A stretch of 64,000 nt of DNA, taken from the IMG/VR virus record IMGVR_UViG_3300030419_008158, positions 1 through 64,000 of that record, one strand, 5' to 3'. The notes below the pieces were generated by a model. It was not told where the DNA came from. It searched no databases and saw only the letters and a list, made by a program, of their open reading frames with translations. This document shows positions 13,633 to 63,355 of this stretch, in pieces. Every line of letters begins with the position of its first letter. Position 1 is the stretch's first letter. The position numbers were made by a program, and so were the translations under genes.

Positions 13633-14173
13633 ATTCACCCTCAAGGATATCAAACAAAACCTTTGCTGTGTCTTCACCGTAATGATTATTGATAAATGTC
13701 GATGCTTTGTTTAATATAACAGCTTCCCAATCAATCAAATTCTGATAATTTTTTACAAGTCGGGCAATATTAGAGGCAAAGTTTCTAAGATCAATATCAT
13801 CAGCAGATGCTTCAAAAAGTCTTCTGTGGACGATCTCAGCGATACCAATTTCTTCTGTGTTTACTACGGCTGATTTTCGGGCTTCTTCTTCAAAGTCAAC
13901 AAAAAGACTGTCAAGTTCCTGGTCTATGGAGTCACTTAGCTTATATTGTTCAGACGGACTTACATCGACCTCTTCTTCTTCTTCTCCGGCTTCAGTGTCT
14001 TCAGCTTCTTCTGCACCTCCTCCACCCTCGGCGGCGCCGCCTTCATCTTCACCCCCAAAGATTTCTTCTTCAGCTCCTTCATCGCCGCCGGCGTCTTCTG
14101 CGGCCTCTTCGTCCTGTTCAAATAAGCGTCGATAAGCTGTCTCTTTCAGGCTGTGTCTTTTACTTTTTTTCAT
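13553..14173 (-). CDS. Acidic hypothetical protein, putative virion component
   Basis: E/G-rich linker; RRLFE occurs twice. Confidence 0.65.
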   Translation of the reverse strand: MKKSKRHSLKETAYRRLFEQDEEAAEDAGGDEGAEEEIFGGEDEGGAAEGGGGAEEAEDTEAGEEEEEVDVSPSEQYKLSDSIDQELDSLFVDFEEEARKSAVVNTEEIGIAEIVHRRLFEASADDIDLRNFASNIARLVKNYQNLIDWEAVILNKASTFINNHYGEDTAKVLFDILEGEYGIAKETKEEPPGPPVAVGARSEGGG

Positions 14174-14859
14174 TGAGAAACCCTCGCAATTTTTTCGCAC
14201 TTCTTGAAACGTTTTTCAATAATGTCCCAATTGAACTCTCTCATCATATTCTTGACGTATCCGTCAATATTGTCTAGATAATCACGATAATAGACACCCT
14301 CACTTACATCCAAGACAATTACCGGAATGGCTGAAAAAGGTACACCGGTATCAGCAGTGTCGACTACAAAATTGAGATATCGCTTAAGATACATGCTATA
14401 TGCACAAACAGCATAACCGTCTCGGGAGCTTTTTGCACAGGCAATGAAATCTTTTTGCCAAGCATCAAAAGTACCAAAATCTCTAGTTAGGCGCATATAA
14501 CAAAGCATGTCCATCGTGATTGTGCTGTTTAGATCACTAATGTTGTCTAAAAACTTTCCTTGCAAAAAAGCATCGTTGATAGCAAATGCCTCTGCGACTT
14601 TCTGATTTCTGTATGCACTTCCAACTTTATTTGCATTTTCAGGGTCAGCACCTTCAAGTTCAGCACTAATTTTATTCAAAGTTTCGACTGTGTTTTCAAA
14701 ATGCTTCAATCGAGCTGACTTTACCTTGGGGCTAAGTTTTTCTGTGTTTAGGACGAACTTTTTAGGCTCAACAACATAAGCCTCCGAAAGATTCTGTTTT
14801 CCTGGAAGTACATCATCAATTGCTTTGATTACTTCATTTTTAAGTTTTTTAGAATTCAT
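14170..14859 (-). CDS. Fe/Mn superoxide dismutase-fold protein, metal ligands degenerate
   Basis: RDFGTFDAWQKDF, PVIVLDVSEGVYYRDY (canonical DVWEHAYYxDY), NWDIIEKRF. Confidence 0.8.
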   Translation of the reverse strand: MNSKKLKNEVIKAIDDVLPGKQNLSEAYVVEPKKFVLNTEKLSPKVKSARLKHFENTVETLNKISAELEGADPENANKVGSAYRNQKVAEAFAINDAFLQGKFLDNISDLNSTITMDMLCYMRLTRDFGTFDAWQKDFIACAKSSRDGYAVCAYSMYLKRYLNFVVDTADTGVPFSAIPVIVLDVSEGVYYRDYLDNIDGYVKNMMREFNWDIIEKRFKKCEKIARVSQ

Positions 14860-16618: not shown

Positions 16619-17047
16619 TCATTTTTTTGGACTAAACTGTCGAACTTTTTTTTGTGATTCCGCTAGTAGATCAAGGCCTGCTGTATCTCTATATGTTTCA
16701 TCAAATACAATCTCATCAATGTTGCCGTTGACGAGTGCTTTGGCACACATTTTGCAGGGTGATAGCGTGACATACATTTTCTTTTTCTTAGGGTTGTTGT
16801 AGTCAAGCTTTATAAGCGCATTAATTTCTGCATGAATACATCCACTTTGTCCAGGCTCTAAAGAATCAACTGTATTTGATCCACCTGATTGATCTCCGTT
16901 ATACCCAACTGAAAGAACTTGAGTATTGTCATCTGAAACTATCACAGCCCCTACTTTATAGCGAGGATCTATACTTCTTTCAGATATTGCATGTGCTACT
17001 TTCATCCATATGTCATCCCACTCAGGTCTATTTTTCTTTTTTGTCAC
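16619..17047 (-). CDS. dCMP deaminase
   Basis: RPEWDD, VGAVIV, GYNG, HAEINA, PCKMC. Confidence 0.92.
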   Translation of the reverse strand: MTKKKNRPEWDDIWMKVAHAISERSIDPRYKVGAVIVSDDNTQVLSVGYNGDQSGGSNTVDSLEPGQSGCIHAEINALIKLDYNNPKKKKMYVTLSPCKMCAKALVNGNIDEIVFDETYRDTAGLDLLAESQKKVRQFSPKK

Positions 17048-17942
17048 TAGGGCCCTCCGCAACTAAATTAGGAATTATGCTGGCATCGTCTGGTGTCACA
17101 TGCGCATCGTTCTGGAATACATCATCTACGTGAACGGTACTTGGAAGCGAAAATCCTGCTGCTTTTTTGTGTCCTCCTCCTCCAAATTTTTTAGCAATTT
17201 CACTTACATCTACGTCATCATGAAAACTTCTCAAGCTCACTCGATATTCGTGTCTATCATGATCATAATACCAGACTACAGCGTAGTCACAATCGGGTGA
17301 TAGTTTTGCTCCAATTTCACTCATCCAATGTGAGCTATTGACAACATAGACTTTCTTTCTATTGCATGTACGTAAAGTAGCTCTATCAGCTATTTTTTTT
17401 ATAACTGTTTTTGAATAGGCAAGTATGTAAGAACCTCTTTTGCATGCTTCTTGAAAAACACTGTCATCCTCGTATTCTGTAAATGCTTCAAATTCAAAGG
17501 GGACCATTGCAAAAGCTGCAGAAAATTCTTTGCTGTATTCTAATTCCCATTTCCAAAGATCACGATCTTCGATGTAGTCTATGAACTTAGGCGGTTTTTT
17601 GTTTGGATGGAAAAAGTCCCATGATAATCGTGCTCCCGATTTACTCATATCAAAAATTGTGTCTGTTATGTCATGAAGTTCTACAAGCGCAGATTTATGA
17701 TGATCTATCACAATAAGACTTTTTGATTTTTCAATCATTGCTTTTGTAGTAGAGTTGTCATAAGAAAAGTCTAAGATTGCAACATTTTTTCCTGTCACAT
17801 CGGGTGGGGGATCACCGTGTGTTGCTGCGTGATATTCAGCTTTATTTCCTAAAAGCTTCCATGCAGCCCACGCTGCACCAAAGCCATCGCTACAATTGGC
17901 GTGATATATTACAAAATCTATCTTGGCGGGATCATGACTCAT
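17028..17942 (-). CDS. DHH/DHHA1 phosphoesterase (NrnB-like)
   Basis: YHANCSDG, LDFS, IDHH, DRDLW, SLRS, GGGGHKKAAGF. Confidence 0.9.
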   Translation of the reverse strand: MSHDPAKIDFVIYHANCSDGFGAAWAAWKLLGNKAEYHAATHGDPPPDVTGKNVAILDFSYDNSTTKAMIEKSKSLIVIDHHKSALVELHDITDTIFDMSKSGARLSWDFFHPNKKPPKFIDYIEDRDLWKWELEYSKEFSAAFAMVPFEFEAFTEYEDDSVFQEACKRGSYILAYSKTVIKKIADRATLRTCNRKKVYVVNSSHWMSEIGAKLSPDCDYAVVWYYDHDRHEYRVSLRSFHDDVDVSEIAKKFGGGGHKKAAGFSLPSTVHVDDVFQNDAHVTPDDASIIPNLVAEGPSDKKEK

Positions 17943-17952
17943 ATTTCTCCGT

Positions 17953-18504
17953 TTATCTCAAAAACCCTGTGTGATCATGACATCTTGGTTCATACTTCTC
18001 AGAGCCTCCGACATCAATTTGACTCAATCCTTCCACTTTTGGAACAGTGTAGAAAGCATCTTTGCCGCATATGGGACAAACAGCAGGGCATACTTCTATT
18101 CTGGTAGCCCATGGAAACATTTTTTGAACTTCTGCAAACGTTTCTCCCCTAGCAGATAACTGAATTGTGGAAACAAAAACTGTCTTGCCTTTTGAGAACA
18201 AATCTATTAGCACATCAGACACACCGTCTATCATAAAAGCTTCATCAACTGCAATAATATCACAATCACGTGATGTGTCTAGTATATCGCTCCCAGAAGA
18301 GACACACTTTGCATCCCACTTATATCCTGCATGTGTGACAATGGAGTCAACTAAATATCTATGGTCCATTTTGGGCTTGTAAGCTGCTATCTTTTTAGAC
18401 TGGTATTTTGCTCTGTCGAGTGCTGCTAACATTCTACTGGTTTTTCCGCCAAACATCGGGCCCGTAAACAAGACAAACTCAGGATCAGTCTTGACGCTAC
18501 TCAT
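17953..18504 (-). CDS. tdk: Thymidine kinase
   Basis: GPMFGGKT, AVDEAF, CPICG, YEPRC. Confidence 0.92.
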   Translation of the reverse strand: MSSVKTDPEFVLFTGPMFGGKTSRMLAALDRAKYQSKKIAAYKPKMDHRYLVDSIVTHAGYKWDAKCVSSGSDILDTSRDCDIIAVDEAFMIDGVSDVLIDLFSKGKTVFVSTIQLSARGETFAEVQKMFPWATRIEVCPAVCPICGKDAFYTVPKVEGLSQIDVGGSEKYEPRCHDHTGFLR

Positions 18505-19513
18505 TCGTAAGTTCCCACCATGCAAGAGTTTTGTTCATACCTGACTCGAAGGATTCCTGAGGTGACCATCCCGTGTCAAATCCAATTTTCTGAACTGATG
18601 CGAGTGTGTGCTTTACATCCCCAGGACGCTCTGGGGCATTTTTAACTCCAAACCCTCCTACTTTTTCATCGAGCATTTTTAGAATTTCATTGTTTGAGAC
18701 TGCGCTTTCTGTGCCGACGTTATAATAGCGAAAACCTGAAAGGTTTTTGTGAGAAGCACATGTATACATCGCACTGGCAACATCTGTCACGTAGACCATA
18801 TCTCTAGTTTGCTCGCCATCACCATCTGACCGGAGCATCTCTTTGCTTTTAAGTTTGTCACACCATGCAGCAACAGCAGTTGCATACGGATTATCTCCAG
18901 TGCAACCCGGACCATATACATTAAAAAATCTTAGTGCAACACTATCAACATCATAGAGGTCACTAAACTGCTTCATGAAAAGCTCGCACACAAATTTTTG
19001 AAGCCCGTATGGACTGTTAGGGTTGCATTCAGTATCTTCGTGTGTAGCTGACACTTTTTTACCACCGGAAACATCTCCGTATACAGAAGACGACGATGCA
19101 AATACGAAACGATCAATATTTGCTTTGCGACAAGCGCTTAAAAGCTCAACAGTTTTCATCAAGTTCACTTCAGTTGAAATTGCTGGAAATTCAACACTAA
19201 AGCCCACCCTAGGGTTTGCTGCTAGATGAAAGACATGCGTATATCCGCCACTTACAAAGTGGCTCAAAACTTCAGAATCAACAAAGTCACCGGTAATAAC
19301 AACGGCATCTTTTTTAGATGTTGCCTCGTTCTTGTCAAGCGCTGCCACCAAGCTAGGAATTACTACACGCACCTCCAAACCCTTGTCTGTCAAATTAGAA
19401 ATATCCCCAGAGGATAAATCATCCACAACAGTTACGCTGGCACCCTCATCCACCAATTTTTTTACTAAGTGTGCACCAATAAATCCACACCCGCCTGTCA
19501 CTAACGCCTTCAT
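18497..19513 (-). CDS. NAD-dependent nucleotide-sugar epimerase/dehydratase (extended SDR)
   Basis: TGGCGFIG, HLAA, SSSSVYG, YGLQK, RFFNVYGP, GDGEQTRD. Confidence 0.93.
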   Translation of the reverse strand: MKALVTGGCGFIGAHLVKKLVDEGASVTVVDDLSSGDISNLTDKGLEVRVVIPSLVAALDKNEATSKKDAVVITGDFVDSEVLSHFVSGGYTHVFHLAANPRVGFSVEFPAISTEVNLMKTVELLSACRKANIDRFVFASSSSVYGDVSGGKKVSATHEDTECNPNSPYGLQKFVCELFMKQFSDLYDVDSVALRFFNVYGPGCTGDNPYATAVAAWCDKLKSKEMLRSDGDGEQTRDMVYVTDVASAMYTCASHKNLSGFRYYNVGTESAVSNNEILKMLDEKVGGFGVKNAPERPGDVKHTLASVQKIGFDTGWSPQESFESGMNKTLAWWELTNE

Positions 19514-20442
19514 TTTACCTCCTCATTGTCGTTCCATGATGGCAAATCATATCTAATGTGTGCACAATTTAGACGAACACTAATGTCTATTGCACTCACA
19601 GGTAATTTATAAACCTTCGCAACTTGCAAAGATAAATGACATAAAAATCTCAAATCAACAGAAGCATTTCTATGTACATCTGTGCTACGGAAGACCCCTA
19701 ACACCTTAAGCAACCCATTCCTTATGAGAAAATGTACAGAAGATATACAGGAGTCACTAGAATAGTAAAATCTACGACTGTCTAAGCCTTGCGGTTTGTT
19801 ATAAGGATTGTCGCCTGAAAATTCTTTTGCAAATATGTCTGTTGTTTTCTGCAAAATTTCGCGATAGTAATCCTTTTCACCCGGATGTTCCATTACTCTA
19901 GAAAAATCATTTTCAATTGACGGACTAAACTCTACGTTGATTGTTGCTTCTCCGTCACAAGCTTCAACTGCGTCAATTGTTGCTTTTCCAATAGAGTCGA
20001 TTCCGCCCTTGTCAAATGAGCACAGCCACTCTATGCATGTGTCTGCTAACTCATCTTGCGAAAGTACATCTTCTATCACTAAAACATTTGGAAAAGCTGC
20101 TATCTTTTTTGTTTCATCTTTGAAAATACTGTGCAATCTACAAAGGCTTTTTTTATCTTGAAATTCATCGCCCCGGACGTTCAGCCGCCTTATAAGCTCA
20201 TCTTTTGGCGGAATTACAATAATGACCCTATTGTTCAGATTTAAAAGTTCTCTTTTGAGACCCTGCCTATGACTTTTTGTATCTCTTCCAAACTGTCTTG
20301 CATAACAGATCATTGATAAAAAAGATCGATCTTGAATATTCCATAAAAAATTAGTCTTTTTATGAATTTTTTGATACAACGTTGTCTTGCCTGAAAGGTC
20401 AGGGCCTTCTATTGTCACTATTTGCGTTGGAAACTTTGTCAT
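19510..20442 (-). CDS. dNMP (thymidylate-kinase-like) kinase fused to truncated thymidylate-synthase-fold domain
   Basis: EGPDLSGKTT and QDRS; then SRR...SCISSVHF...FRSTDVHRNASVD...AHI; TAATG coupling to dnaE. Confidence 0.8.
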   Translation of the reverse strand: MTKFPTQIVTIEGPDLSGKTTLYQKIHKKTNFLWNIQDRSFLSMICYARQFGRDTKSHRQGLKRELLNLNNRVIIVIPPKDELIRRLNVRGDEFQDKKSLCRLHSIFKDETKKIAAFPNVLVIEDVLSQDELADTCIEWLCSFDKGGIDSIGKATIDAVEACDGEATINVEFSPSIENDFSRVMEHPGEKDYYREILQKTTDIFAKEFSGDNPYNKPQGLDSRRFYYSSDSCISSVHFLIRNGLLKVLGVFRSTDVHRNASVDLRFLCHLSLQVAKVYKLPVSAIDISVRLNCAHIRYDLPSWNDNEEVK

Positions 20443-23400
20443 TATGCAACTCTTCTTAGTTTGTATGCAGAAGTTGACATTCCCCAATTCGGATCATTAG
20501 AGACATGAGCCATCCAGAGCGTGTATTTGTCAATGTCAGAGTCAAGCTTGCCCCATACTCTCAACCATCCTGTCTTATGATTATTGTCTGTGACTCTGAG
20601 CCTATAAAAATCTTTTCCATTTTTTGTTTTCTTCTTGATCACATCAACAATAACAAACCAGCCGATACCCTTGCCTCCGGCGGGAACATCATGGACTGAG
20701 AGGACATTTTTATCTTTGAGGCGGTTCATCAAGCTTGTCGGAAACAAAAGGTCTCCATCAACTGTGGACGTCAAGTCATAAGAAAGTTCGACTTTTTCAA
20801 CACGACTCCAATCTTCCACATCAAAAAAATCAGATAAAATCTGGTCCAAAAATACTTTTGGTTCTTCGCCTGCCTTTTCGAGCTTTTTTATTTGTGTTTT
20901 AGTTAGGCCGTAAATACCTTTTCTGAGCTTTTCGTAATTTTTTTCATGAGTTAGTGCTTCTAGAAGCTGTCGATGACTCGAAACAGATCCGTTCGTAAAC
21001 TCTTCGAGAGACTGTAAAGCCTCAATTTTGCACAGTGATGAAAGACATGTCTTGTTCATTTTACTATGCTTCCACACGCCATTTTCATCATAAAACATGT
21101 CAACTAAAGACTTATACGGACGCATTTCCAAAATTTCTTTCATCGCGGTAGATCCAATACCTTTGACAGCTGAAAGTGGAGGTACAAATGCATTGATGTC
21201 TTTGGAAAATTCCCATTCTTCTCCCGAATAATTTACATCGATCTGTGCGAAATCAAATCCGTATGACTTTATCTCAGAAATTGCTTTTGACAAATTTGTA
21301 GGGCTATTATTTTCGGATTGAAGGATTGTAGCTAGCCACTCGTGCTCGTAATGGGTGTGCAGCCATGCTGCGTAATACGAATCAATGGCATAAGACACTG
21401 CGTGTGATTTATTGAAACCATACACAGAGAAAGCCTCGATAGTCTTCCAGAGAGCTTCTGTGATACTTCTATCAATGCCATGGAGACTGTAGGCACCTTC
21501 AACAAACTTTTTACGTGCAGCCTCTCGCTCCCCACCTTTTTTGCCCATTGTATCTAGTGACTTCTTAACCAGTGTCTTTCGAAGCTTATCAGACTCACCG
21601 GGCGAGAATCCAGCTAGTTCCACTGCCAGTGTCATAAACTGCTCTTGAAAAACAACAAAGTTAAATGTCGGCCCTAGCACTTTTTCGATCACAGGATGAT
21701 CATACTTGATCTCTGATGCATTCTTTTTAGCTTTTACATATTTCCTATGGACATTGGCTTTTAAGGGTCCTGGGCGGTAAATAGCTGTCAATGCAGCTAA
21801 CTCTGTAATGGTTGTCGGTTTGGCGGCTAGACAGAAACGTCTTGCACCTGTTGCTGTAAACTGAAACACGCCTGTAAATCTACCATCGTGATACACGTGC
21901 TTCCACACCTCAGGATCATCCTGCTGATTATACCGACAATTGAGATGCTCATCAAAGAACTTCTTGATATCAGCAAATGTCGGATTAGGATTTCCTTGCT
22001 TCTTGAGAATGCGACCGATGCAATTTTCAACATCTTTAAGCAGCGTCAATCCAAGAAAGTCAAACTTTAAAAATCCATTGTCTTCAAGATTTCTAAAGTT
22101 CATTCCTTCTGTCCAGGGGGTCTGGAGTTCGCCCCGAACACCGATGATGGGCATTGTAGATGCCAGCTCGTCTGGAGGCGCAATAATTACGCCGCCGGCG
22201 TGTCGACCAATGGATCGATTTTCCATAAATAGTGTTTCAACATGTTTTCCTACCTCTGGATACTTTTCCATAAAGTCGCGGTAGCCCTTAGAGTACTTCA
22301 GACAGTCCTCGTGCTTTAAGACGAAAACAGACTTTTCCTGATTTTCGTCTTTCGCATGTTTCATAACTTCATCTTGTAAAGGTCCTGTCATCTTATTGAC
22401 TTCTGCAAAGTCAATTCCATAAAATTTTGAAATATCTTTAATTAGTGACTTTAGCTTGAGTGTGTTAAAGTTAGATACAGGAATAACTGCGTCGTCGCCA
22501 AATAGTTCACGAGATGCATCAATCAAAGCATCACGATCGCCAGCATCAGTGTCGATATCAGGCCAAGATGTTCTGTGCCTCCCAAGAAATCGAGACCAGA
22601 GCAAACCGTGGGGCAAAGGATCAATTTGTGTAATCCCTAACAAGTAATTGACAAGTGATCCAGCACCTGATCCCCGACCCGGGCCGAAGAGAGTTCGCTT
22701 TTCAGCAAGATGGAAAATCTTGTACATTGCCAAAAAGTACGCTTCGTACCCGAGATACTTGATGTCAGACATCTCCTCCTTCATGCGTGCAACATATTCA
22801 GGTTTCGAAGCAAGACCCTCTCGAATCATAGCTTCTTTGACGAGATCAGCTAGCATTTTAAAAGCAGGCTTTTCAGGTGATCCAAACTTGGGCAGCTTTA
22901 CTGACGTGTCTATCCAAGTGTCTTCGCATTTTTGCCACGTGATGTCGTGAGTACGCTCAATTGCGTCTCGAACATTCTCTTCATGCCCCTTGTAGAAGTC
23001 GTATTCGTCATATCCCGCCTTGAACTCGTCCCACATCTGGTGAGCATTTTTAGGGTACAGCTTGCACTTCAAGTCTTCTTCCTTGGGAAGCATACTTTGA
23101 TCTAGCTTTGCGCCCATCCACCCAAGCTTTTTATAAAGTTCACGAGCCTGCCATTTTTGCGGATCAGGAAAATGAGAATCCGCAGTTGCAATGAGAGGGA
23201 TTCCTGTTTTTTGAGACAGATCCAGCAAGCATCTGTTTGTCAAATGCTGCGCTGGAAGATCGTTAAACTGCATTTCCAAGAAAAAATTGTCTTGTCCAAC
23301 ACAATCAACAAATCTATCTGTCATATTTTCAAGACGATTCATGATAGGATTGTAATCATCTAGATTGTTCATTAGGTCTGGATGAAGCTCATCAAATCTT

Positions 23401-24068
23401 AGACCTCCAAACTGTCGATAGATGAGGCCAGACGCGAGGCCGCCTACACACGCTGTAGAAACAATCAACCCTTCGCCGTGTTCCTTGAGCATTTTGTAGT
23501 CAATCCTAGGAAAACGATAAAAACCGTGCTTGTATGACTTTTTAACTAGTGTGAAAAGATTACCTAGACCTACTTGGTTTTTTGCAACCACGACAAGATG
23601 ATAATATCGCTTCCACTCAGGCTTATTCCCTCTGGAACGCTTTGTTTCCTCTTCGTCCTCAATAACATGGCCGCCTTGCTCGACCTCTTGGTCAGCAATA
23701 ATAACAGTGTTTTCTGTTGCAAGCTTTTCTTTTTGCTTTGAGGATTTGGCATCTTTGACAGCTTGTCGGTGCATGTCATAAGATTCTCGCCAATCTTCTA
23801 GTGACGGGACAAAGTAAAACTCGACGCCATAGATCTGTCGATACTTTCGGCCGGCCTTTTGCATTTTTACTGTGTGTGATCGGGCGTGAGCCAGGCCTGA
23901 GCCGTTACCGTGGTCTGTAAGTGCCCATGAGTCCATTCCTTGAGCTTCTGATAGAACAAAATCGATATGTTCTTTAGGATAACCCAATCCATCAAATGTG
24001 CTAAATGATGAGTGTGCGTGAAGGCCTGTAAAACGATTAGGTCTTCGAAACTTGCTAAATTGTGACAA
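20442..24068 (-). CDS. dnaE: DNA polymerase III alpha subunit (family C)
   Basis: PHP HAHSSFSTFDG/TDHG/DSH; GRGSGAGS; PDIDTD; GRHAGG; KFDFLGL; GFNKSHA; TTG start with AGGAG. Confidence 0.97.
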   Translation of the reverse strand: MSQFSKFRRPNRFTGLHAHSSFSTFDGLGYPKEHIDFVLSEAQGMDSWALTDHGNGSGLAHARSHTVKMQKAGRKYRQIYGVEFYFVPSLEDWRESYDMHRQAVKDAKSSKQKEKLATENTVIIADQEVEQGGHVIEDEEETKRSRGNKPEWKRYYHLVVVAKNQVGLGNLFTLVKKSYKHGFYRFPRIDYKMLKEHGEGLIVSTACVGGLASGLIYRQFGGLRFDELHPDLMNNLDDYNPIMNRLENMTDRFVDCVGQDNFFLEMQFNDLPAQHLTNRCLLDLSQKTGIPLIATADSHFPDPQKWQARELYKKLGWMGAKLDQSMLPKEEDLKCKLYPKNAHQMWDEFKAGYDEYDFYKGHEENVRDAIERTHDITWQKCEDTWIDTSVKLPKFGSPEKPAFKMLADLVKEAMIREGLASKPEYVARMKEEMSDIKYLGYEAYFLAMYKIFHLAEKRTLFGPGRGSGAGSLVNYLLGITQIDPLPHGLLWSRFLGRHRTSWPDIDTDAGDRDALIDASRELFGDDAVIPVSNFNTLKLKSLIKDISKFYGIDFAEVNKMTGPLQDEVMKHAKDENQEKSVFVLKHEDCLKYSKGYRDFMEKYPEVGKHVETLFMENRSIGRHAGGVIIAPPDELASTMPIIGVRGELQTPWTEGMNFRNLEDNGFLKFDFLGLTLLKDVENCIGRILKKQGNPNPTFADIKKFFDEHLNCRYNQQDDPEVWKHVYHDGRFTGVFQFTATGARRFCLAAKPTTITELAALTAIYRPGPLKANVHRKYVKAKKNASEIKYDHPVIEKVLGPTFNFVVFQEQFMTLAVELAGFSPGESDKLRKTLVKKSLDTMGKKGGEREAARKKFVEGAYSLHGIDRSITEALWKTIEAFSVYGFNKSHAVSYAIDSYYAAWLHTHYEHEWLATILQSENNSPTNLSKAISEIKSYGFDFAQIDVNYSGEEWEFSKDINAFVPPLSAVKGIGSTAMKEILEMRPYKSLVDMFYDENGVWKHSKMNKTCLSSLCKIEALQSLEEFTNGSVSSHRQLLEALTHEKNYEKLRKGIYGLTKTQIKKLEKAGEEPKVFLDQILSDFFDVEDWSRVEKVELSYDLTSTVDGDLLFPTSLMNRLKDKNVLSVHDVPAGGKGIGWFVIVDVIKKKTKNGKDFYRLRVTDNNHKTGWLRVWGKLDSDIDKYTLWMAHVSNDPNWGMSTSAYKLRRVA

Positions 24069-25108: not shown

Positions 25109-25612
25109 TTACTCGATCGCGTCAGAATAGGGCTCAACAAGAAGCTGCTTTGCTTCGAAGCATCTGTTCAAATAGTCTTCGAGCTCCTCAATGCTGGTAC
25201 AAACCTTTACACCGCTTCTTGCAAGCATCAAGTTGAACTTAGCCCCCTCAGGCAACCCACCACAGTAATACACAATTGGCTTTTGATGTGCAAAGGCGAA
25301 GCCGGCTTCCCAAATAGTTCCAATATCCTTGTCTCTTGTATTGACAATAAGAAAGTTAGCTGCAGTAATTTCTCTGAGATTTCCTAAAAAGGTTTCATCT
25401 TGTGTTTCTTTGGGTGCATCAGGTGGACAGACAAAAATTCTTCTTGGACTTGCAAGATCGATCCAGTCTCTGTCATCACAAACTTTTTCTAGCTGGTCTA
25501 GTTCTTCAGCTTGTGTTGGATTGAACCATCCGGCTGCCAAATATACTTTTTGGGCAACAACTGGATTCTCTGTATTCTCTGTATTCTCTGTATTCTCTGT
25601 ATTCTCAGACAT
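25109..25612 (-). CDS. Nucleoside 2-deoxyribosyltransferase family protein
   Basis: VYLAAGWF, DIGTIWEAGFA, KPI, NLML; GGAGG before ATG 25612. Confidence 0.88.
   Translation of the reverse strand: MSENTENTENTENTENPVVAQKVYLAAGWFNPTQAEELDQLEKVCDDRDWIDLASPRRIFVCPPDAPKETQDETFLGNLREITAANFLIVNTRDKDIGTIWEAGFAFAHQKPIVYYCGGLPEGAKFNLMLARSGVKVCTSIEELEDYLNRCFEAKQLLVEPYSDAIE
25565..25606. repeat. 9-bp coding tandem repeat (ENT), about 4.7 copies
   Basis: attctctgt x4 + attctc. Confidence 0.9.
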
Positions 25613-25721
25613 TTCGCTTTCCTCCAAAATCTGTTATTTCGTTTTGCTTGTTGTTAGTAGTCATTTTTTCTCCTAAAGCTTATCCTTATAGCCTGGACTT
25701 GCTTGAATTTCATAATTTTCT

Positions 25722-26696
25722 TTAGACATTTTCTTCTTTTTTCCAAAAAATATTAGGAAGAGATGCATAAAAATCATGACGACGATCATGCTCCCACCCC
25801 CTTTTACAAACCGCTTTGTGAAAATTTCTTCCCCAACTCCCGGGTTTTTCAACAGGCCCTTCACCAAAGTCATACAGATTAAAGTGTCCGACCGATGTAT
25901 CATATTTTGTCCAGTAAGTACTATACACAAAATTATCACTAATTCTGTTTAGATAGCTGTCGAGCCACGGAAAAGGTGTGCCTGTCTCTTTACTGTCTTC
26001 AGCCTGTATGTGTTCGACAACTTCATAAAAAGTCCCCGCGTCATAAGCGTCTAGCTGGTCACCTATATGAAGATTCTTTAGGCCCATCTCTTTCTTGACT
26101 CTTTCAATTAGCCTTACACTCAGCCCGCTGACTTCACTAACGTATACGTCTGTTTCAGGTAAGTGATAGGCAAACCAAATAGAAGAAATTCCAATCCCTG
26201 CCCCCACATCCAATATTGTCTTGGGCACATAACCTAAGTGATCCCACCACATTAAAGTGTGAAATATCGGAGACGTATTTCTCATTTTGGCTTTGTCAAT
26301 CATCCCAGTCACATTTAAGCCGCACGATACAGTTTCAAACACATAATAGGGATCATCATAAATTGACACATCAAAATTTTGGCGCCAGCGCTGGAGCATG
26401 TCATTGATAATCTTGCTATCGCGATCACCCAGCTGGTCTAACTCTTCCTTGGAAAACTCTGACTTTAATTCATCTTTATAAATTTCTAGAAGTCGCTCAT
26501 AACTTAGGCCTGGGATTGATGGATCGTAGCCTCTTGTTTGTAAAAACTTTCCACCGTAATGATGCTCTTTATTGCCCCACTGGACATACTCGAATTTTTT
26601 AGTTCGCCTTCTTCCAGTGGGTGGCGTGTGCTGATAGTCGAAGTACTTTTTCTCTTTTCCTTCGACTTCCCAGGTTTTTAGAGCATTATCATCCAT
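25722..26696 (-). CDS. Class I SAM-dependent methyltransferase
   Basis: ILDVGAGIG, acidic residue after strand 2 (VSEVS), YEVVEHI. Confidence 0.8.
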   Translation of the reverse strand: MDDNALKTWEVEGKEKKYFDYQHTPPTGRRRTKKFEYVQWGNKEHHYGGKFLQTRGYDPSIPGLSYERLLEIYKDELKSEFSKEELDQLGDRDSKIINDMLQRWRQNFDVSIYDDPYYVFETVSCGLNVTGMIDKAKMRNTSPIFHTLMWWDHLGYVPKTILDVGAGIGISSIWFAYHLPETDVYVSEVSGLSVRLIERVKKEMGLKNLHIGDQLDAYDAGTFYEVVEHIQAEDSKETGTPFPWLDSYLNRISDNFVYSTYWTKYDTSVGHFNLYDFGEGPVEKPGSWGRNFHKAVCKRGWEHDRRHDFYASLPNIFWKKEENV

Positions 26697-27657
26697 TCTC
26701 GTAAGCTGCCTTCAATGCCTGGAACTCTTCCATTAAGTCACGCCACATAGTTGTAAAAACTTTCTCTCCAGTTCCATGTGTCCCGTTGAGCTCTTCACGT
26801 CGACAGGGATAAATTGTGTCGGCCTCATGATACTCAAACGTATCATTCTTTGGTTCAGGCTGGTACAAGTTTGTACCTCGGCTAATCCACTTATCACCTT
26901 CCTTTACGCGGAACGTATTGATATAATGGAAATCCGGTTTATCAAAATTGAACACTTGAGTCAGCTCAGGAATTGCCTTGCATGCGGCGATGGCCATCTC
27001 AGCAGCTAAAATATTGTCAGCTGCAGGCTGAATCTGCACGTCTTGTCTCTGACGGACGAATCCGATCAAATCTTTAAGATTAAGTCGCATATAGTAAAAA
27101 GAAGTCATGCATTTCGGCAAAATCATTCTTGCGTCCATCATAGAAATAACTTTAGAATCAGTCATATCTGCATACAGCTGCTTAGACTGTCTAACAATCT
27201 CCTTGTAGCGCTCCAGGTACTCGGGCGAGTTTTCGACAGACTCCGGAACAACGGCAGGATCATCTCTAAGATCGCGGTCGCCGGTACATTGGGCTGCAAA
27301 AGATCCTGCTCGATGTCGAATAATATGAGTTACTTCCTGAAAAGATAGGCCAGACAATCTAAACGTGAACCCCAGACATTCCATGGGAGTTGGAAGCGCA
27401 CGAAACTGCAAAACATCTAGAAGATTTTTACTCTTGATGCTATCCGGTACCTCGTCAGGCCTGATTTCACTAGGGTCGTCGGCCCAAGTAGCCTTTACGT
27501 AATGCCACGCGACATCTCGTGCTTGATTTGTTGTGGGGGCGTCAACCAATTCAACATTAAGAGCTTCTAAATTATTACAAAACTCTGTATCAAACGGTCT
27601 ACCAAATTTTAGATCCATCGGAAGTTCGATAGGCTCTAGATCATTATTTAACGGCAT
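26689..27657 (-). CDS. ThyX-like flavin-dependent enzyme (non-canonical motif)
   Basis: FTFRLSG, HIIRHRAGSFAAQCTGDR, DARMILP, NLKDLIGFVRQR. Confidence 0.82.
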   Translation of the reverse strand: MPLNNDLEPIELPMDLKFGRPFDTEFCNNLEALNVELVDAPTTNQARDVAWHYVKATWADDPSEIRPDEVPDSIKSKNLLDVLQFRALPTPMECLGFTFRLSGLSFQEVTHIIRHRAGSFAAQCTGDRDLRDDPAVVPESVENSPEYLERYKEIVRQSKQLYADMTDSKVISMMDARMILPKCMTSFYYMRLNLKDLIGFVRQRQDVQIQPAADNILAAEMAIAACKAIPELTQVFNFDKPDFHYINTFRVKEGDKWISRGTNLYQPEPKNDTFEYHEADTIYPCRREELNGTHGTGEKVFTTMWRDLMEEFQALKAAYENG

Positions 27658-27953
27658 TATTCTGCTCCTTTGTTGTTGGGCCGATTTGGATAGTATTCTT
27701 TTTTGGTCAAAAAATCAATCAAAATATCAGTTGCATTACGAAGACCACTTCTGTTGAATTCCGTATCTCCTACGCGAAGCCACGTCTCCTCTAAAAACTC
27801 ATCAAGCTCTTGACCGCACATCTTCAAGACAGGATCACTTAGAGCAGACAGATCATATTCTGGATTTTCCATCAACTCAAGAACGTAATGCGATACTCTC
27901 GACGAGTGATGCAACGTCGCCTTCTTCCCAATCGAATGCATAGATTCCATCAT
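27657..27953 (-). CDS. Hypothetical protein (start uncertain)
   Basis: TAATG coupling to ThyX-like gene. Confidence 0.5.
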   Translation of the reverse strand: MMESMHSIGKKATLHHSSRVSHYVLELMENPEYDLSALSDPVLKMCGQELDEFLEETWLRVGDTEFNRSGLRNATDILIDFLTKKEYYPNRPNNKGAE

Positions 27954-28818
27954 GATTCATAACTCCCATGTTGTAATTTCTTTTCGGCACAAGACACGGC
28001 ACACCGTGCATAACATACTCAGAGGCATGTTTAGGTGAGTCATCAATTGCACACACAACTTTTCCCTGCTTGTATGCTTCGAGCGAAGATACTGCAATAT
28101 ACTTTTCTGAACTTAGCTGCACAGAGTCAAATTCTTTTACATACTTGTCAAGCCATTCATATGTCTCGTGCATACACTTTAGCTCGGTTTCTGGGCGTGC
28201 TGTCAAAATATGAATCCAATACCCTTTTTTTCTGAGGGTTTTTAGACTTTTGATCACGTTATCACAAGTATCTATTTTTCTTAGACTTCCAGAATCAATA
28301 AACTCAATAAGCAGCTGGTCGCCTGACTTTCCTTCTACTGGTTTGCTTAGAAAATATTCATTTGATCTATGATCGACATTGCATCCCGGGTATGTTTCAT
28401 TTACCCAATCATAGAAATTTTGTCTAAATCTGGCAATTACGTCATCAACATCAACAACGACAACTTTTTGTCCGCTCCACTTTGATAGATTTTTTTCTGT
28501 TCGGACTCTTAGATTAGCATCTCTAGACTCAAACGCACTAATTGCATCATTTTCGTCATAGTCCCATAAATTTAGTATAGACAAGCAGTATCGATAAACA
28601 TCCATCGTTTCAAATAGAATATTCTGCATATGTGTAGGAGTGATGTTCGGCCTGTGCTCTCGATAGTGGACTGAATCTGCCAGCTGCGTGAGCTCGCTTT
28701 GCATCGCAAGACAAAGTGTCTTGTGCTTCTCAATTTTCTCCTGCTCAGACATTTTGTCTGAATTGTAGAAATTTCTAGAAAAATTCTTTTGCTTGTCAAG
28801 CATTTTCTTTAAGTCCAC
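27877..28818 (-). CDS. All-alpha NTP pyrophosphatase-like domain fused to HAD 5'(3')-deoxyribonucleotidase-like domain
   Basis: SELTQL...FETMDV; VVDVDDV, LTAR, IDDSP. Confidence 0.78.
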   Translation of the reverse strand: MDLKKMLDKQKNFSRNFYNSDKMSEQEKIEKHKTLCLAMQSELTQLADSVHYREHRPNITPTHMQNILFETMDVYRYCLSILNLWDYDENDAISAFESRDANLRVRTEKNLSKWSGQKVVVVDVDDVIARFRQNFYDWVNETYPGCNVDHRSNEYFLSKPVEGKSGDQLLIEFIDSGSLRKIDTCDNVIKSLKTLRKKGYWIHILTARPETELKCMHETYEWLDKYVKEFDSVQLSSEKYIAVSSLEAYKQGKVVCAIDDSPKHASEYVMHGVPCLVPKRNYNMGVMNHDGIYAFDWEEGDVASLVESIALRS

Positions 28819-28830
28819 AGGTTTTCTCCT

Positions 28831-29061
28831 CTAAAAAGGATTGTTGACAAGATAAGCGACGTACTCTATAATCTCTTGTTCGTCGCTATCTTCGCAATCC
28901 TTGTAAGATTTACCCATCTTTGTCTTGATACAGCGCCAAATATGAGCGTATGGGTTTCTTGCAGAATGATTTGGACTATCAGGAAGATTTCCTTCTAATG
29001 CTTTTCCGCCAAGCGCAACTGCTTGTCGTATTCTTTCAGCAACTTCAGGAGACATCATCAA
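28831..29061 (-). CDS. Hypothetical protein
   Basis: In-operon; RNPYAHIW..IK..MG.SYKD. Confidence 0.6.
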   Translation of the reverse strand: MMMSPEVAERIRQAVALGGKALEGNLPDSPNHSARNPYAHIWRCIKTKMGKSYKDCEDSDEQEIIEYVAYLVNNPF

Positions 29062-30512: not shown

Positions 30513-30528
30513 ATAACACCTCTGTTGT

Positions 30529-63349: not shown

Positions 63350-63355
63350 GTTCAC

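What the first reader, a model, noticed from the sequence alone, without database searches (positions are those of the whole stretch)
19510..20442. Kinase fused to a truncated TS fold carrying the cytosine-specifying Asp
Seen: a TMK-like P-loop domain followed by ~150 aa with SRR, catalytic Cys (SCI instead of PCH), RSTD and His (AHI). Counting from RSxD, the residue equivalent to E. coli ThyA Asn177 is Asp (RSTDVHRNASVD). Known: Asn selects dUMP; Asp selects dCMP, as in T4 gp42. The N-terminal part of TS, which contributes folate contacts, appears absent. Inference: a dCMP-modifying enzyme using possibly folate-independent chemistry (hydroxylation or C5 attack on another electrophile), channelled to its own kinase and coupled (TAATG) to dnaE.
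Basis: partly seen in the sequence, partly recalled or inferred. Interest (0 to 1): 0.82.

Follow-up and report, generated by a model that had tools for sequence, protein, structure and literature searches.

The report
Kinase fused to minimal TS-fold domain
An uncultured large phage encodes, right after its DNA polymerase, a nucleotide kinase fused to a shrunken thymidylate-synthase-like domain that keeps the catalytic and cytosine-recognising residues but has lost the folate-binding parts, so it probably makes and phosphorylates a modified dCMP of unknown chemistry.

Summary
Window 19510-20442 (-) is an intact 310-aa ORF. Residues 1-140 are a YorR/thymidylate-kinase-like P-loop kinase. Residues 141-310 are a 170-aa reduced thymidylate-synthase (TS) fold. 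Structure search returns only TS-fold enzymes, and the best match is the flavin-dependent dCMP hydroxylase AfhB. Profile alignment to ThyA gives E 1e-9. It maps Y192=Y94, R223/R224=R126/R127, C232=C146, R252/S253=R166/S167, D255=D169, D263=N177 and H295=H207. In 217 relatives the Cys is kept in 214 and the Asp in 216. The ThyA segments that hold folate cannot be accommodated. These are the first ~80 residues, squeezed into 41 here, and the last ~41 residues. The family is found only in uncultured phages. It occurs fused, or as adjacent kinase and mini-TS genes. It sits in a conserved pyrimidine module with a ThyX-like protein, a nucleotidase, dCMP deaminase and a dUTPase-like protein. This module occurs in DnaE-, PolA- and PolB-type phages. 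The most likely function is a dCMP C5-modifying enzyme with a non-canonical co-substrate, channelled to its own kinase. The chemistry is not established. The hydroxylase marker D169N is absent here but present in a third of the family. I found no description of this reduced TS branch. I rate it a new variant of a known kind.

The parts
19510..20442 (-). Whole gene: 310-aa kinase plus mini-TS fusion protein (stop at 19510-19512)
   Evidence: Intact ORF. 483 full-length homologues at E<=1e-3. AF2 model of the whole protein: pLDDT 94.5, pTM 0.89.
20023..20442 (-). N-terminal P-loop nucleotide kinase domain (residues 1-140), YorR/thymidylate-kinase-like
   Evidence: Family profile against PDB: SPbeta YorR 2axp E 3.4e-11, then thymidylate kinases. 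phrog_761 'thymidylate kinase' E 3.5e-10. Foldseek to YorR 3kb2 TMt 0.63.
20380..20406 (-). Walker A / P-loop GPDLSGKTT (residues 13-21)
   Evidence: G13, D15, G18 and K19 are invariant in 36 homologues. Coordinates checked.
20323..20331 (-). D38-R39-S40 motif of the kinase (position of the DR(Y/F) motif of TMK/dNK-type kinases)
   Evidence: Invariant in 36 homologues. The assignment to the DRY/ERS motif rests on established knowledge of the family.
20167..20187 (-). LID-like segment R86...R90-G91-D92 of the kinase
   Evidence: R86, R90, G91 and D92 are invariant. Aligns with the RLRVRGDE segment of YorR.
19513..20022 (-). C-terminal reduced thymidylate-synthase-fold domain ('mini-TS', residues 141-310)
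   Evidence: AF2 of the domain alone: pLDDT 93.2. Foldseek PDB: all top 50 are TS-fold enzymes, best 9iqu dCMP hydroxylase AfhB E 6.9e-7, TMq 0.54. hhalign to TS homologues: probability 96.4%, E 1.1e-9. No Pfam hit.
19864..19878 (-). E189-K-D-Y192-Y193; Y192 aligns with ThyA Tyr94
   Evidence: hhalign. E189 kept in 213/217 and Y192 in 202/217.
19789..19815 (-). Family-specific conserved loop G210-D-N212-P-Y214-N-K-P-Q218, with no counterpart in ThyA
   Evidence: Falls in an insertion relative to ThyA in hhalign. G 192, N 189, Y 185 and Q 186 of 217.
19771..19779 (-). S222-R223-R224, equivalent to ThyA S125-R126-R127 (phosphate-binding arginines donated across the dimer in TS)
   Evidence: hhalign. 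R223 kept in 214/217 and R224 in 201/217.
19747..19749 (-). Cys232, equivalent to the catalytic Cys146 of ThyA
   Evidence: hhalign. Phmmer/hmmsearch alignments to MilA, T4 gp42 and AfhB. Kept in 214/217.
19678..19689 (-). R252-S253-T254-D255, equivalent to ThyA R166-S167-C168-D169
   Evidence: hhalign. R 213/217 and S 215/217. Position 255 is D in 137 and N in 70 of 217.
19654..19656 (-). Asp263, equivalent to ThyA Asn177 (pyrimidine-specificity position; Asp in dCMP/CMP-specific TS homologues)
   Evidence: hhalign. Aligns with the Asp of T4 gp42, MilA and AfhB. Kept in 216/217.
19552..19560 (-). H295-I-R297; H295 is equivalent to ThyA His207, and Arg occupies the Tyr209 position in this subfamily
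   Evidence: hhalign. H kept in 214/217. Distant members keep Tyr (AHIY).
20442..24068 (-). Upstream DnaE-type DNA polymerase III alpha gene; its stop overlaps the start of the fusion gene
   Evidence: ORF. DnaE homologues in phages at <=30% identity. The same order is found in relatives L001, L002 and L014.
18497..19513 (-). Downstream GalE-like NAD-dependent epimerase/dehydratase; its start overlaps the fusion gene's stop (ATGA)
   Evidence: Pfam Epimerase E 3e-51. NCBIfam galE 156 bits, below the cut-off. Junction.
16619..17062 (-). dCMP deaminase, a recurrent neighbour of the mini-TS in all phage backgrounds
   Evidence: Pfam dCMP_cyt_deam_1 E 2e-21. Adjacent or near in L001, L002, L007, L011 and L012.
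26689..27657 (-). Long, divergent ThyX-like protein (322 aa), a recurrent partner of the mini-TS
   Evidence: Pfam Thy1 E 1.2e-18. Homologous to the ~345-aa ThyX-like genes next to mini-TS in PolA/PolB phages (BLAST E 1e-10 to 1e-17). Motif alignment.
27877..28818 (-). dUTPase_2 (all-alpha NTP pyrophosphatase) fused to an NT5C-type 5'-deoxynucleotidase; part of the recurrent module
   Evidence: Pfam, PHROGs. The NT5C part is homologous to the nucleotidase genes just upstream of kinase/mini-TS in L007, L008 and L011.

Best explanation
The gene encodes a bifunctional enzyme of phage deoxypyrimidine metabolism.

Proposed mechanism of the C-terminal domain: The 170-aa domain is a pared-down thymidylate-synthase fold. 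It binds dCMP through the phosphate-binding Arg/Ser set and His295. It reads the cytosine ring with Asp263. It uses Cys232 to add to C6, so that C5 becomes nucleophilic, as in every TS-family enzyme.

Co-substrate: The parts of TS that clamp methylene-tetrahydrofolate are gone, so the electrophile is probably not folate bound in the canonical way. The only known precedent is a flavin hydroperoxide, which gives 5-hydroxy-dCMP. A different co-substrate is possible.

Kinase and downstream use: The rigidly attached YorR/TMK-like kinase then phosphorylates the product to the diphosphate. This gives a modified dCTP for the DnaE replicase, whose gene is translationally coupled to this one.

Shown: the fold, residue equivalences, conservation, fusion/split pairing and gene context. 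Inferred: catalysis, substrate, co-substrate and the kinase's substrate.
For: Fold and residue mapping:
- Foldseek of the isolated domain finds only TS-fold enzymes. The flavin-dependent dCMP hydroxylase AfhB is first (9iqu E 6.9e-7, TMq 0.54), followed by 9iqc, T4 dCMP hydroxymethylase and MilA (whole protein).
- hhalign gives probability 96.4% and E 1.1e-9. It maps Y94, R126/R127, C146, R166/S167, D169, N177 and H207 onto Y192, R223/R224, C232, R252/S253, D255, D263 and H295.
- Atlas structure search gives TM 0.72-0.73 to TS families.

Conservation typical of an active site, over 217 domains: C 214, D263 216, R223 214, R252 213, S253 215, H295 214, Y192 202.

Loss of the folate site:
- ThyA 1-81 corresponds to only 41 residues and ThyA 224-264 to 3 residues.
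- The short C-terminus is shared with the hydroxylase RB69 gp48 and with small cytosine-type TS homologues.
- The residue at the ThyA Leu143 position is Ser or another polar residue, not a bulky hydrophobic one (criterion from PMC13326640).
- Position 169 switches freely between Asp (137) and Asn (70), which is hard to reconcile with a conserved folate contact.

Coupling to the kinase:
- Most family members are fusions.
- Stand-alone mini-TS genes are preceded by a homologous kinase gene (E 1e-13 to 1e-14; loci).
- The whole-protein model has pTM 0.89.
- Phage clusters of thymidylate kinase fused to full-size TS also exist.
- Known 5-hydroxy-dCMP synthases need a cognate dNMP kinase for efficient incorporation into DNA; expressed alone they gave only a trace (PMC13326640).

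Context:
- The gene overlaps dnaE (TAATG) and the next gene (ATGA).
- ThyX-like, dCMP deaminase, TK and dUTPase-like genes already cover dTMP supply. A TS-fold domain is therefore not needed for dTMP.
- TS and ThyX are normally anticorrelated in jumbo phages (PMC7824862).
Against: - No activity data exist for any member of the family.
- This protein has RSTD, not the D169N that PMC13326640 proposes as diagnostic of hydroxylases.
- No equivalent of ThyA Glu58 could be aligned. Glu58 is kept in ThyA, T4 gp42 and RB69 gp48.
- Where a flavin or any co-substrate would sit cannot be judged, because model coordinates and ligand docking were not available.
- In PolA- and PolB-type phages the mini-TS co-occurs with a full-size cytosine-type TS homologue. 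There it would be redundant, or would do a different step.
- No DNA glycosyltransferase and no clear dCTP-exclusion enzyme were identified in the window.
- The surrounding module is dominated by dTMP-supply genes, which fits a plain thymidylate kinase.
Confidence: 0.4

Rival explanations
1. The protein is the phage's thymidylate (dTMP) kinase. The mini-TS is a non-catalytic or regulatory appendage. It could be a dCMP/dCTP-sensing or scaffolding domain that tunes the kinase or docks it to other enzymes of the dTTP-supply module (ThyX-like, dCMP deaminase, TK, dUTPase).
For: - The kinase part matches thymidylate-kinase models, and some sources name homologues 'thymidylate kinase'.
- All recurrent neighbours are dTMP-supply or pyrimidine-salvage genes.
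- No second kinase of this type occurs in the window.
- The cofactor-binding parts of TS are lost.
- One relative (P0223) has lost the Cys and the RR pair.
Against: - A pure binding domain would not be expected to keep the nucleophilic Cys (214/217), the Tyr94 equivalent (202/217) and the whole phosphate- and sugar-binding set over sequences that have diverged to the limit of detection.
- Stand-alone mini-TS genes exist.
Confidence: 0.2
2. The mini-TS is a folate-dependent dCMP hydroxymethylase or dCMP methylase, working like T4 gp42 or the XP12-type enzyme. It binds methylene-tetrahydrofolate in a reduced site, perhaps completed by the kinase domain or the dimer partner. The kinase acts like T4 gp1.
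For: - This protein has the Asp169 plus Asp177 pattern of T4 gp42 and MilA (RSxD...D), rather than the hydroxylase pattern.
- T4 dCMP hydroxymethylase is among the best structural matches.
- A pterin-4a-carbinolamine dehydratase gene lies in related loci.
Against: - ThyA residues 1-81 and 224-264 contain the folate contacts (established knowledge). Here they are represented by 41 and 3 residues.
- No Glu58 equivalent could be aligned.
- One third of the family has Asn at position 169.
- The Pfam TS model does not match.
- No DHFR was seen in the window.
Confidence: 0.15
3. The mini-TS does covalent Cys chemistry that needs no large co-substrate, or it acts on an already modified nucleotide. 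Examples are hydrolytic deamination through the 5,6-dihydrocytosine adduct, removal or exchange of a C5 group, or a second step on the product of the full-size cytosine-type TS homologue that accompanies it in PolA/PolB phages.
For: - The mini-TS co-occurs with a full-size cytosine-type TS homologue in L007, L008 and L011.
- The cofactor site is lost.
- A zinc dCMP deaminase gene is immediately adjacent in L007, L011 and L012.
- C6 adducts of cytosine are known to deaminate readily (established chemistry of C5-methyltransferases).
Against: - In the window's lineage no other TS-fold gene was found in 64 kb, nor in two 21-kb related loci.
- A second deaminase would be redundant.
- No precedent exists in the TS family.
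Confidence: 0.12

Closest known systems
Flavin-dependent dCMP hydroxylase / 5-hydroxy-dCMP synthase (phage HY126 AfhB, PDB 9iqu/9iqc; RB69 gp48, DLP3 gp80; PMC13326640)
   Same: - Best structural match.
- TS fold, catalytic Cys, and Asp at the Asn177 position.
- Short C-terminus ending soon after the His207 equivalent.
- Needs a dNMP kinase to feed DNA synthesis.
- One third of the mini-TS family carries the D169N marker.
   Different: - This protein has Asp at position 169.
- The domain is ~50-65 residues shorter.
- No alignable Glu58 helix.
- It has a family-specific G-x-N-P-Y-x-x-P-Q loop.
- It is fused to the kinase.
- Sequence similarity is only borderline (E 0.35).
- Flavin binding was not tested.
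T4 gp42 dCMP hydroxymethylase with gp1 dNMP kinase
   Same: - Cytosine-specifying Asp, Asp169 kept, catalytic Cys.
- Among the top structural hits.
- The pathway logic of dCMP modification followed by a dedicated kinase and the phage polymerase.
- Co-existence with a dCMP deaminase and a separate dTMP synthase.
   Different: - gp42 is 246 aa with a folate site (ternary complex 6a9a).
- The kinase (gp1) is a separate, unrelated gene.
- The mini-TS lacks the corresponding N- and C-terminal segments.
MilA CMP hydroxymethylase (PDB 5b6d, 5jnh)
   Same: Best single-sequence PDB match for the C-terminal domain. The Cys to RxxD...D stretch aligns. The window's lineage also has a Nuc_deoxyrib_tr-family gene, which is the family of MilB.
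   Different: MilA is 325-342 aa, folate dependent, and acts on the ribonucleotide in antibiotic biosynthesis. The match is not significant on its own (E 1.1).
ThyA thymidylate synthase (Pfam PF00303)
   Same: Same fold, and the same positions for Tyr94, Arg126/127, Cys146, Arg166/Ser167, Asp169 and His207.
   Different: - Asp instead of Asn177.
- Ile instead of His147.
- Polar residue instead of Leu143.
- About 95 residues shorter.
- No Pfam match.
- It co-occurs with a ThyX-like gene.
SPbeta YorR (PDB 2axp, 3kb2) and thymidylate kinases
   Same: The N-terminal domain matches YorR at E 3.4e-11 and TMKs more weakly. The P-loop, DR motif and Arg-rich LID are conserved. Foldseek gives TMt 0.63-0.66.
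   Different: It is below the Pfam and NCBIfam thymidylate-kinase cut-offs. Its substrate is unknown. It is fused to a TS-fold domain.
Phage 'thymidylate kinase/thymidylate synthase' fusion proteins (~437 aa cluster in the ESM Atlas)
   Same: Same domain order in viral proteins. TM 0.72 to the mini-TS part.
   Different: Those carry a full-size TS domain recognised by PF00303.

Membership tests
Thymidylate synthase superfamily (TS fold) | Three-dimensional fold: central sheet with the Cys-bearing strand, helix J and the His207 strand | tested here: met
   AF2 domain model has pLDDT 93.2. All top-50 Foldseek PDB hits are TS-fold enzymes, with E down to 6.9e-7 and TMq 0.42-0.60. BFVD hits are likewise TS/dCMP hydroxymethylases. 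Atlas gives TM 0.72-0.73.
Thymidylate synthase superfamily (TS fold) | Catalytic cysteine (ThyA Cys146) that attacks C6 | tested here: met
   Cys232 aligns with Cys146. Kept in 214/217 relatives.
Thymidylate synthase superfamily (TS fold) | Nucleotide phosphate/sugar binding set (Arg126', Arg127', Arg166, Ser167, His207; Arg21) | tested here: inconclusive
   R223, R224, R252, S253 and H295 align and are conserved. No equivalent of Arg21 could be assigned. Arg297 at the Tyr209 position may substitute, but this is inference.
Thymidylate synthase superfamily (TS fold) | Detection by the curated sequence model (Pfam PF00303 at the gathering score) | tested here: not met
   No PF00303 hit even at E 0.1. 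NCBIfam methanogen-type TS matched at only E 0.0014, far below the cut-off. Distant relatives reach phrog_160 'thymidylate synthase' at E ~1e-6.
ThyA-type dTMP synthase (dUMP methylation with CH2-THF) | Asn at position 177 (uracil recognition) | tested here: not met
   Asp263 at this position, in 216/217 relatives.
ThyA-type dTMP synthase (dUMP methylation with CH2-THF) | Folate-binding segments (around residues 48-58 and 79-83, and the C-terminal tail) | tested here: not met
   ThyA 1-81 corresponds to 41 residues and ThyA 224-264 to 3 residues. Which residues contact folate comes from established knowledge of ThyA.
5-hydroxy-dCMP synthase (flavin/O2-dependent TS homologues) | N177D together with D169N (signature proposed in PMC13326640) | tested here: not met
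   N177D is present, but position 169 is Asp in this protein (RSTD). 70 of 217 family members do have Asn there.
5-hydroxy-dCMP synthase (flavin/O2-dependent TS homologues) | Bound flavin and O2-derived hydroxyl | not testable with these tools
   Needs purified protein (UV-vis, HPLC of cofactor) and 18O2 labelling, as done for RB69 gp48 (PMC13326640).
5-hydroxy-dCMP synthase (flavin/O2-dependent TS homologues) | Closest structural neighbour among solved structures | tested here: met
   9iqu (AfhB with dCMP) and 9iqc (with dCMP and FAD) rank first and second. The margin over T4 dCH is small.
dCMP hydroxymethylase (T4 gp42 type) | Asp at position 177 and Asp at position 169 | tested here: met
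   D263 and D255.
dCMP hydroxymethylase (T4 gp42 type) | Acidic residue at the ThyA Leu143 position, and Glu58 equivalent | tested here: not met
   Position 143 is Ser229 (family: S 148, D 31, E 5 of 217). No Glu58 equivalent could be aligned. The invariant E189/E207 might substitute, but this is inference.
Thymidylate kinase / dNMP kinase (P-loop NMP kinase fold) | Walker A loop, DR motif, Arg-rich LID | tested here: met
   GPDLSGKTT, D38-R39 and R86/R90-G-D are invariant. YorR E 3.4e-11.
Thymidylate kinase / dNMP kinase (P-loop NMP kinase fold) | Curated family score (Pfam PF02223, TIGR00041) and dTMP specificity | tested here: not met
   PF02223 scored 15 bits against a cut-off of 27. TIGR00041 scored 20 bits against 83. 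Specificity is not testable here.

The most novel reading that the evidence does not exclude
The mini-TS is a previously unrecognised catalytic branch of the TS superfamily. It uses the conserved Cys/Asp machinery on dCMP, with a co-substrate that is neither folate nor the flavin of the known hydroxylases. That co-substrate would be delivered through the family-specific G-x-N-P-Y-x-x-P-Q loop, or by the ever-present long ThyX-like flavoprotein partner. The result would be a new C5-modified cytosine, possibly deaminated next by the adjacent dCMP deaminase to a modified uracil. This base would be incorporated by many uncultured aquatic phages with DnaE-, PolA- or PolB-type replicases.
Probability: 0.15. 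Interest if true: 0.85.

Novelty: new variant of a known kind. Interest (0 to 1): 0.62.

Why it matters
TS-fold enzymes are the entry points to nearly all known pyrimidine modifications of phage DNA: thymine, 5-hydroxymethyl-C and -U, 5-methyl-C and, since 2025-26, 5-hydroxy-C. Those modifications decide whether restriction and CRISPR systems can cut the phage.

This family shows how far the fold can be pared down (170 residues) while keeping the nucleotide-activating half. It is hard-wired to a kinase and to the replicase operon. It is found only in uncultured phages, spread over several replication backgrounds.

If it is active, it marks a set of environmental phages with unrecognised DNA chemistry. 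Such DNA may also sequence or amplify poorly. It would also offer a compact enzyme pair for making modified dCDP/dCTP. If it is inactive, it would be an example of an enzyme fold recruited as a nucleotide sensor for a kinase.

Tried and rejected
- **Pfam and NCBIfam on the protein:** No significant TS or TMK assignment. Family membership had to be shown by profile-profile and structure comparison.
- **tblastn against 50,697 phage records:** I searched with the protein, a stand-alone mini-TS and two distant relatives. There was no match apart from one weak hit to the P-loop region (residues 5-53) of P0247 in an unannotated gut phage contig (E 4e-4). No cultured phage could be used as a reference.
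- **Synechococcus phage S-CBWM1:** Foldseek against viral models pointed to a 151-aa protein of this phage. The family HMM found nothing in the first 50 kb of that genome. I did not scan the remaining 89 kb.
- **Second TS-fold gene:** tblastn with seven TS homologues found none in the window, L001 or L002.
- **DNA glycosyltransferases:** Pfam and PHROGs on most ORFs above 110 aa found none in the window. One distant locus, L012, does carry three glycosyltransferase genes 3-7 kb away.
- **Literature:** No paper describing this reduced TS domain or the fusion was found.
- **Internal stop or frameshift:** Considered and rejected, because the ORF is intact.
- **The ~330-aa gene of the PolA/PolB module versus the window's 324-aa gene:** They are not the same. 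The former looks like an FAD-binding oxidoreductase. The latter looks like a class I SAM methyltransferase. BLAST shows no similarity between them.


Full report
**1. What is in the sequence**

Window 19510-20442 on the minus strand is an uninterrupted ORF of 310 codons plus a stop.
- The ATG at 20442 shares its A with the TAA of the preceding 1208-aa DnaE-type polymerase gene (TAATG).
- The stop TGA overlaps the ATG of the following GalE-like epimerase gene (ATGA).
- The ORF listing extends the ORF to a TTG at 20487. Thirty-five aligned homologues begin at the ATG position, so the ATG is the start.

**2. The two domains**

*Residues 1-140: a P-loop nucleotide kinase.*
- A profile of this part matches the SPbeta prophage protein YorR (PDB 2axp/3kb2) at E 3.4e-11, and thymidylate kinases more weakly.
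- It matches PHROG 761 'thymidylate kinase' at E 3.5e-10.
- The structure model superposes on YorR.
- The Walker A loop, a D-R-S motif and an Arg-rich LID-like stretch are invariant.
- Curated thymidylate-kinase models are not reached, so the substrate is open.

*Residues 141-310: a reduced TS fold.*
- This part has no Pfam match.
- AlphaFold2 with a 36-sequence alignment gives confident models: whole protein pLDDT 94.5 and pTM 0.89, isolated domain pLDDT 93.2.
- Foldseek of the isolated domain against the PDB returns TS-fold enzymes in all 50 top places.
- The first two are the phage HY126 dCMP hydroxylase AfhB with dCMP (9iqu, E 6.9e-7, TMq 0.54) and the same enzyme with dCMP and FAD (9iqc). 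T4 dCMP hydroxymethylase, T4 TS and MilA follow.
- Predicted viral structures give the same picture. The ESM Atlas gives TM 0.72-0.73 to TS families.
- Single-sequence and profile hits to the PDB are weak (E 0.35-2) but are again AfhB, T4 gp42 and MilA.
- hhalign of the family against ThyA/gp42/gp48 gives E 4.5e-6.
- With 217 family domains against seven TS homologues, hhalign gives probability 96.4% and E 1.1e-9.
- More distant family members reach PHROG 160 'thymidylate synthase' at about 1e-6.

**3. Residue mapping and what is missing**

The alignment equates:

| This protein | E. coli ThyA |
|---|---|
| Tyr192 | Tyr94 |
| Arg223/Arg224 | Arg126/Arg127 |
| Ser229 | Leu143 |
| Cys232 | Cys146 |
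| Arg252/Ser253 | Arg166/Ser167 |
| Asp255 | Asp169 |
| Asp263 | Asn177 |
| His295 | His207 |

It matches the Asp of the dCMP/CMP-specific enzymes.

The aligned block covers domain residues 42-167 against ThyA 82-223.
- The first 81 residues of ThyA are represented by 41 residues, predicted as one helix and one strand.
- The last 41 residues of ThyA are represented by 3.
- From established knowledge of ThyA, those regions carry Glu58, Trp80/Trp83 and the C-terminal tail that close over the folate.
- No Glu58 equivalent could be aligned, although Glu58 is shared by ThyA, gp42 and the hydroxylase gp48.
- The short C-terminus is shared with RB69 gp48 and with small cytosine-type TS homologues from related phages.
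- A conserved loop, G210-x-N-P-Y-x-x-P-Q218, has no ThyA counterpart.

**4. The family**
- A word-indexed search found 483 clusters at E<=1e-3. The best 120 were listed; most are about 300 aa and the rest mostly shorter (some likely partial). They come from marine (Tara), freshwater and other metagenomes.
- An exhaustive HMM search of 1.84 billion representative proteins with the mini-TS profile found only 218 representatives. Most are fusions of 290-340 aa. Some are stand-alone proteins of 165-200 aa.
- Over 217 complete domains the counts are: Cys 214, Asp263 216, Arg223 214, Arg252 213, Ser253 215, His295 214, Glu189 213, Tyr192 202.
- Position 169 is Asp in 137 and Asn in 70 members. Both states occur at all depths of the family.
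- No member was found in 50,697 deposited phage genomes.

**5. Context**

The window looks like part of a large phage. The longest contig carrying this exact protein is 284 kb. It encodes:
- DnaE, DnaB-like helicase, RecA, gp32-like protein, topoisomerase II, ligase and ribonucleotide reductase
- GroEL, ClpP and a sigma factor

No close cultured relative exists. DnaE is at most 30% identical to any deposited phage.

Genes around the fusion gene are:
- dCMP deaminase, a DHH phosphoesterase and thymidine kinase
- two NAD-dependent sugar-nucleotide epimerase/reductase-like genes
- a nucleoside 2-deoxyribosyltransferase-family gene
- a SAM-methyltransferase-like gene
- a long divergent ThyX-like gene
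- a dUTPase_2 plus NT5C fusion

The order is conserved in relatives L001, L002 and L014.

The pair of kinase plus mini-TS also occurs in unrelated backbones.
- It is found in PolA-type phages (L007, L011) and PolB-type phages (L008-L010, L013).
- L012 carries a further fused copy beside a dCMP deaminase. The contig ends just upstream, so no replicase gene is visible there.
- In L007 and L008 the two are separate adjacent genes. The kinase genes are homologous to the fused kinase domain (E 1e-13 to 1e-14). Fusion and split forms of one pair indicate a functional link.
- Recurrent partners are the long ThyX-like gene (homologous across backbones), a 5'-nucleotidase (NT5C or HD type), dCMP deaminase, a dUTPase_2-type pyrophosphatase and often the Nuc_deoxyrib_tr gene.

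In the PolA/PolB phages the module also contains two further genes.
- One is a full-size but small (222-290 aa) cytosine-type TS homologue. The one in L011 has the RSAN...D hydroxylase signature.
- The other is a ~330-aa protein that resembles FAD-dependent oxidoreductases. This is a lead only.

No such TS homologue was found in the window or in L001/L002.

**6. What it most likely does**

Every characterised enzyme of this fold uses the Cys to add to C6 of a pyrimidine 5'-monophosphate and lets C5 attack an electrophile.

The arguments for a catalytic, cytosine-specific domain are:
- near-absolute conservation of that Cys
- conservation of the Tyr94 equivalent
- conservation of the phosphate and 3'-OH ligands
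- conservation of the cytosine-specifying Asp
- all of this holds across sequences that have diverged to the edge of detectability

The loss of the folate-clamping parts, the polar residue at the Leu143 position and the free Asp/Asn exchange at position 169 argue against canonical folate chemistry.

The one known non-folate precedent is flavin/O2-dependent hydroxylation of dCMP by TS homologues (PMC13326640, which also reports that these enzymes need a cognate dNMP kinase for efficient incorporation of the product into DNA; expressed alone they gave only a trace). Its solved representative is the best structural neighbour.

Kinase fusion, the rigid two-domain model and translational coupling to dnaE fit production of a modified dCDP for replication. 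I put this at 0.40. The identity of the C5 substituent is open.

**7. Rivals**

- **(a) A thymidylate kinase with a non-catalytic dCMP-sensing or scaffolding TS remnant (0.20).** It fits the dTMP-supply neighbourhood and the co-occurrence with full-size cytosine-type TS homologues. It does not explain the conserved nucleophile.
- **(b) A folate-dependent hydroxymethylase or methylase with a reduced site (0.15).** It fits the RSxD...D pattern of this protein. It does not fit the missing segments or the Asn169 third of the family.
- **(c) Cofactor-less covalent chemistry, or a second step on an already modified dCMP (0.12).** It is suggested by the co-occurrence data and the adjacent deaminase. 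It has no precedent.

**8. Comparison with known systems and novelty**

The protein works like the T4 gp42 plus gp1 pair, or like the RB69 gp48 plus gp159 pair. By fold and active-site residues it belongs to the TS superfamily. It fails the membership tests of three groups.
- ThyA: Asn177 and the folate segments are absent, and the Pfam model does not match.
- The proposed 5-hydroxy-dCMP synthase signature: D169N is absent in this protein.
- The gp42-type hydroxymethylases: the acidic residue at position 143 and Glu58 are absent.

I found no description of this reduced domain or of the fusion in the literature searched. It is best called a new variant of a known kind.

**9. Limits**
- Only 64 kb of a ~284-kb genome was visible.
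- No biochemical data exist for any family member.

Noticed in passing
window 26689-27657 (-); L001:3725-4708, L002:728-1711, L007:4923-5972, L011:5478-6506, L008:4951-5982: A long (320-350 aa) divergent ThyX-like protein accompanies the mini-TS in every complete locus. In the window's lineage the ThyX motif reads RHRAGSFAAQCTGD, against RHRMASYAQESTRY in a canonical ThyX of L011. The second Ser, the Arg and the Tyr are all changed. L011 carries both a long and a canonical ThyX. The long form may not be a plain dTMP synthase.
   Followed up: partly
window 27877-28818 (-) and 29058-29444 (-): A fusion of an all-alpha NTP pyrophosphatase (dUTPase_2) N-terminal part with an NT5C-type 5'-deoxynucleotidase. 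A separate 128-aa ORF upstream matches only the C-terminal part of the dUTPase_2 model. Whether the specificity is dUTP or dCTP is unknown.
   Followed up: partly
window 25722-26696 (-): A 324-aa protein with a class I SAM-methyltransferase motif (ILDVGAGIG; weak MTS/RsmG hits). Its start overlaps the end of the ThyX-like gene. It has no PHROG match. Its counterpart in L002 is annotated DUF7487.
   Followed up: partly
window 25109-25627 (-): A nucleoside 2-deoxyribosyltransferase-family protein. This family includes dNMP N-glycosidases and MilB. It recurs next to the module in L001, L002, L013 and L014.
   Followed up: no
L011:4805-5485 (+), L007:4157-4825 (+), L008:4077-4949 (+): Small (222-290 aa) cytosine-type TS homologues lie next to a dUTPase_2 gene in PolA/PolB phages. 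The L011 protein has RSAN...D, the published 5-hydroxy-dCMP synthase signature. L007 has RSLE...D and L008 has RSAD...D.
   Followed up: partly
L007:5969-6979 (+), L011:6481-7467, L008:5990-6985: A conserved ~330-aa protein between the ThyX-like gene and the nucleotidase has an N-terminal GGGLSG dinucleotide-binding motif. In the ESM Atlas it resembles FAD-dependent amine/protoporphyrinogen oxidases. It is a possible flavin partner of the module.
   Followed up: partly
L013:7760-10636 (+): A uracil-DNA glycosylase domain fused to a family B DNA polymerase, immediately downstream of a stand-alone mini-TS. UDG-polymerase fusions have been linked to T-modified phage genomes (PMC13697223).
   Followed up: no
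L012:4075-8397 (+): Two GT1-type and one GT2-type glycosyltransferase genes lie 3-7 kb downstream of a distant kinase plus mini-TS fusion and a dCMP deaminase.
   Followed up: no
L002:5024-10004 (+): In this relative the DnaE gene is called in two pieces (588 and 758 aa) separated by a 306-aa ORF. This suggests an inserted element, such as a homing endonuclease or intein-like insertion.
   Followed up: no
window 29691-30581 (-) and 34949-35374 (-): A phage-encoded Fpg/Nei-type DNA glycosylase and a short HhH-GPD glycosylase-like protein. The Fpg gene is conserved in L001.
   Followed up: no
window 50676-57617 (-) and 57818-63355 (-): Two very large ORFs (2313 and 1845 aa) without informative family matches.
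   Followed up: no
window 14170-14859 (-); 3967-5580 (-); 3026-3718 (-): A protein with only the C-terminal domain of Fe/Mn superoxide dismutase (conserved in L001 and L002), a GroEL-type chaperonin, and a sigma-70 family factor.
   Followed up: no
Synechococcus phage S-CBWM1 (MG450654), UniProt A0A3G1L3Q7: Foldseek against viral models matched a 151-aa uncharacterised protein of this cultured cyanophage to the mini-TS (E 8.5e-4, TMq 0.54, TMt 0.59). The family HMM found nothing in the first 50 kb of the genome. The rest was not scanned.
   Followed up: partly
P0223 (163 aa): A stand-alone family member has lost the catalytic Cys (Arg instead) and the RR pair. It may be a degenerate, non-catalytic offshoot.
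   Followed up: no
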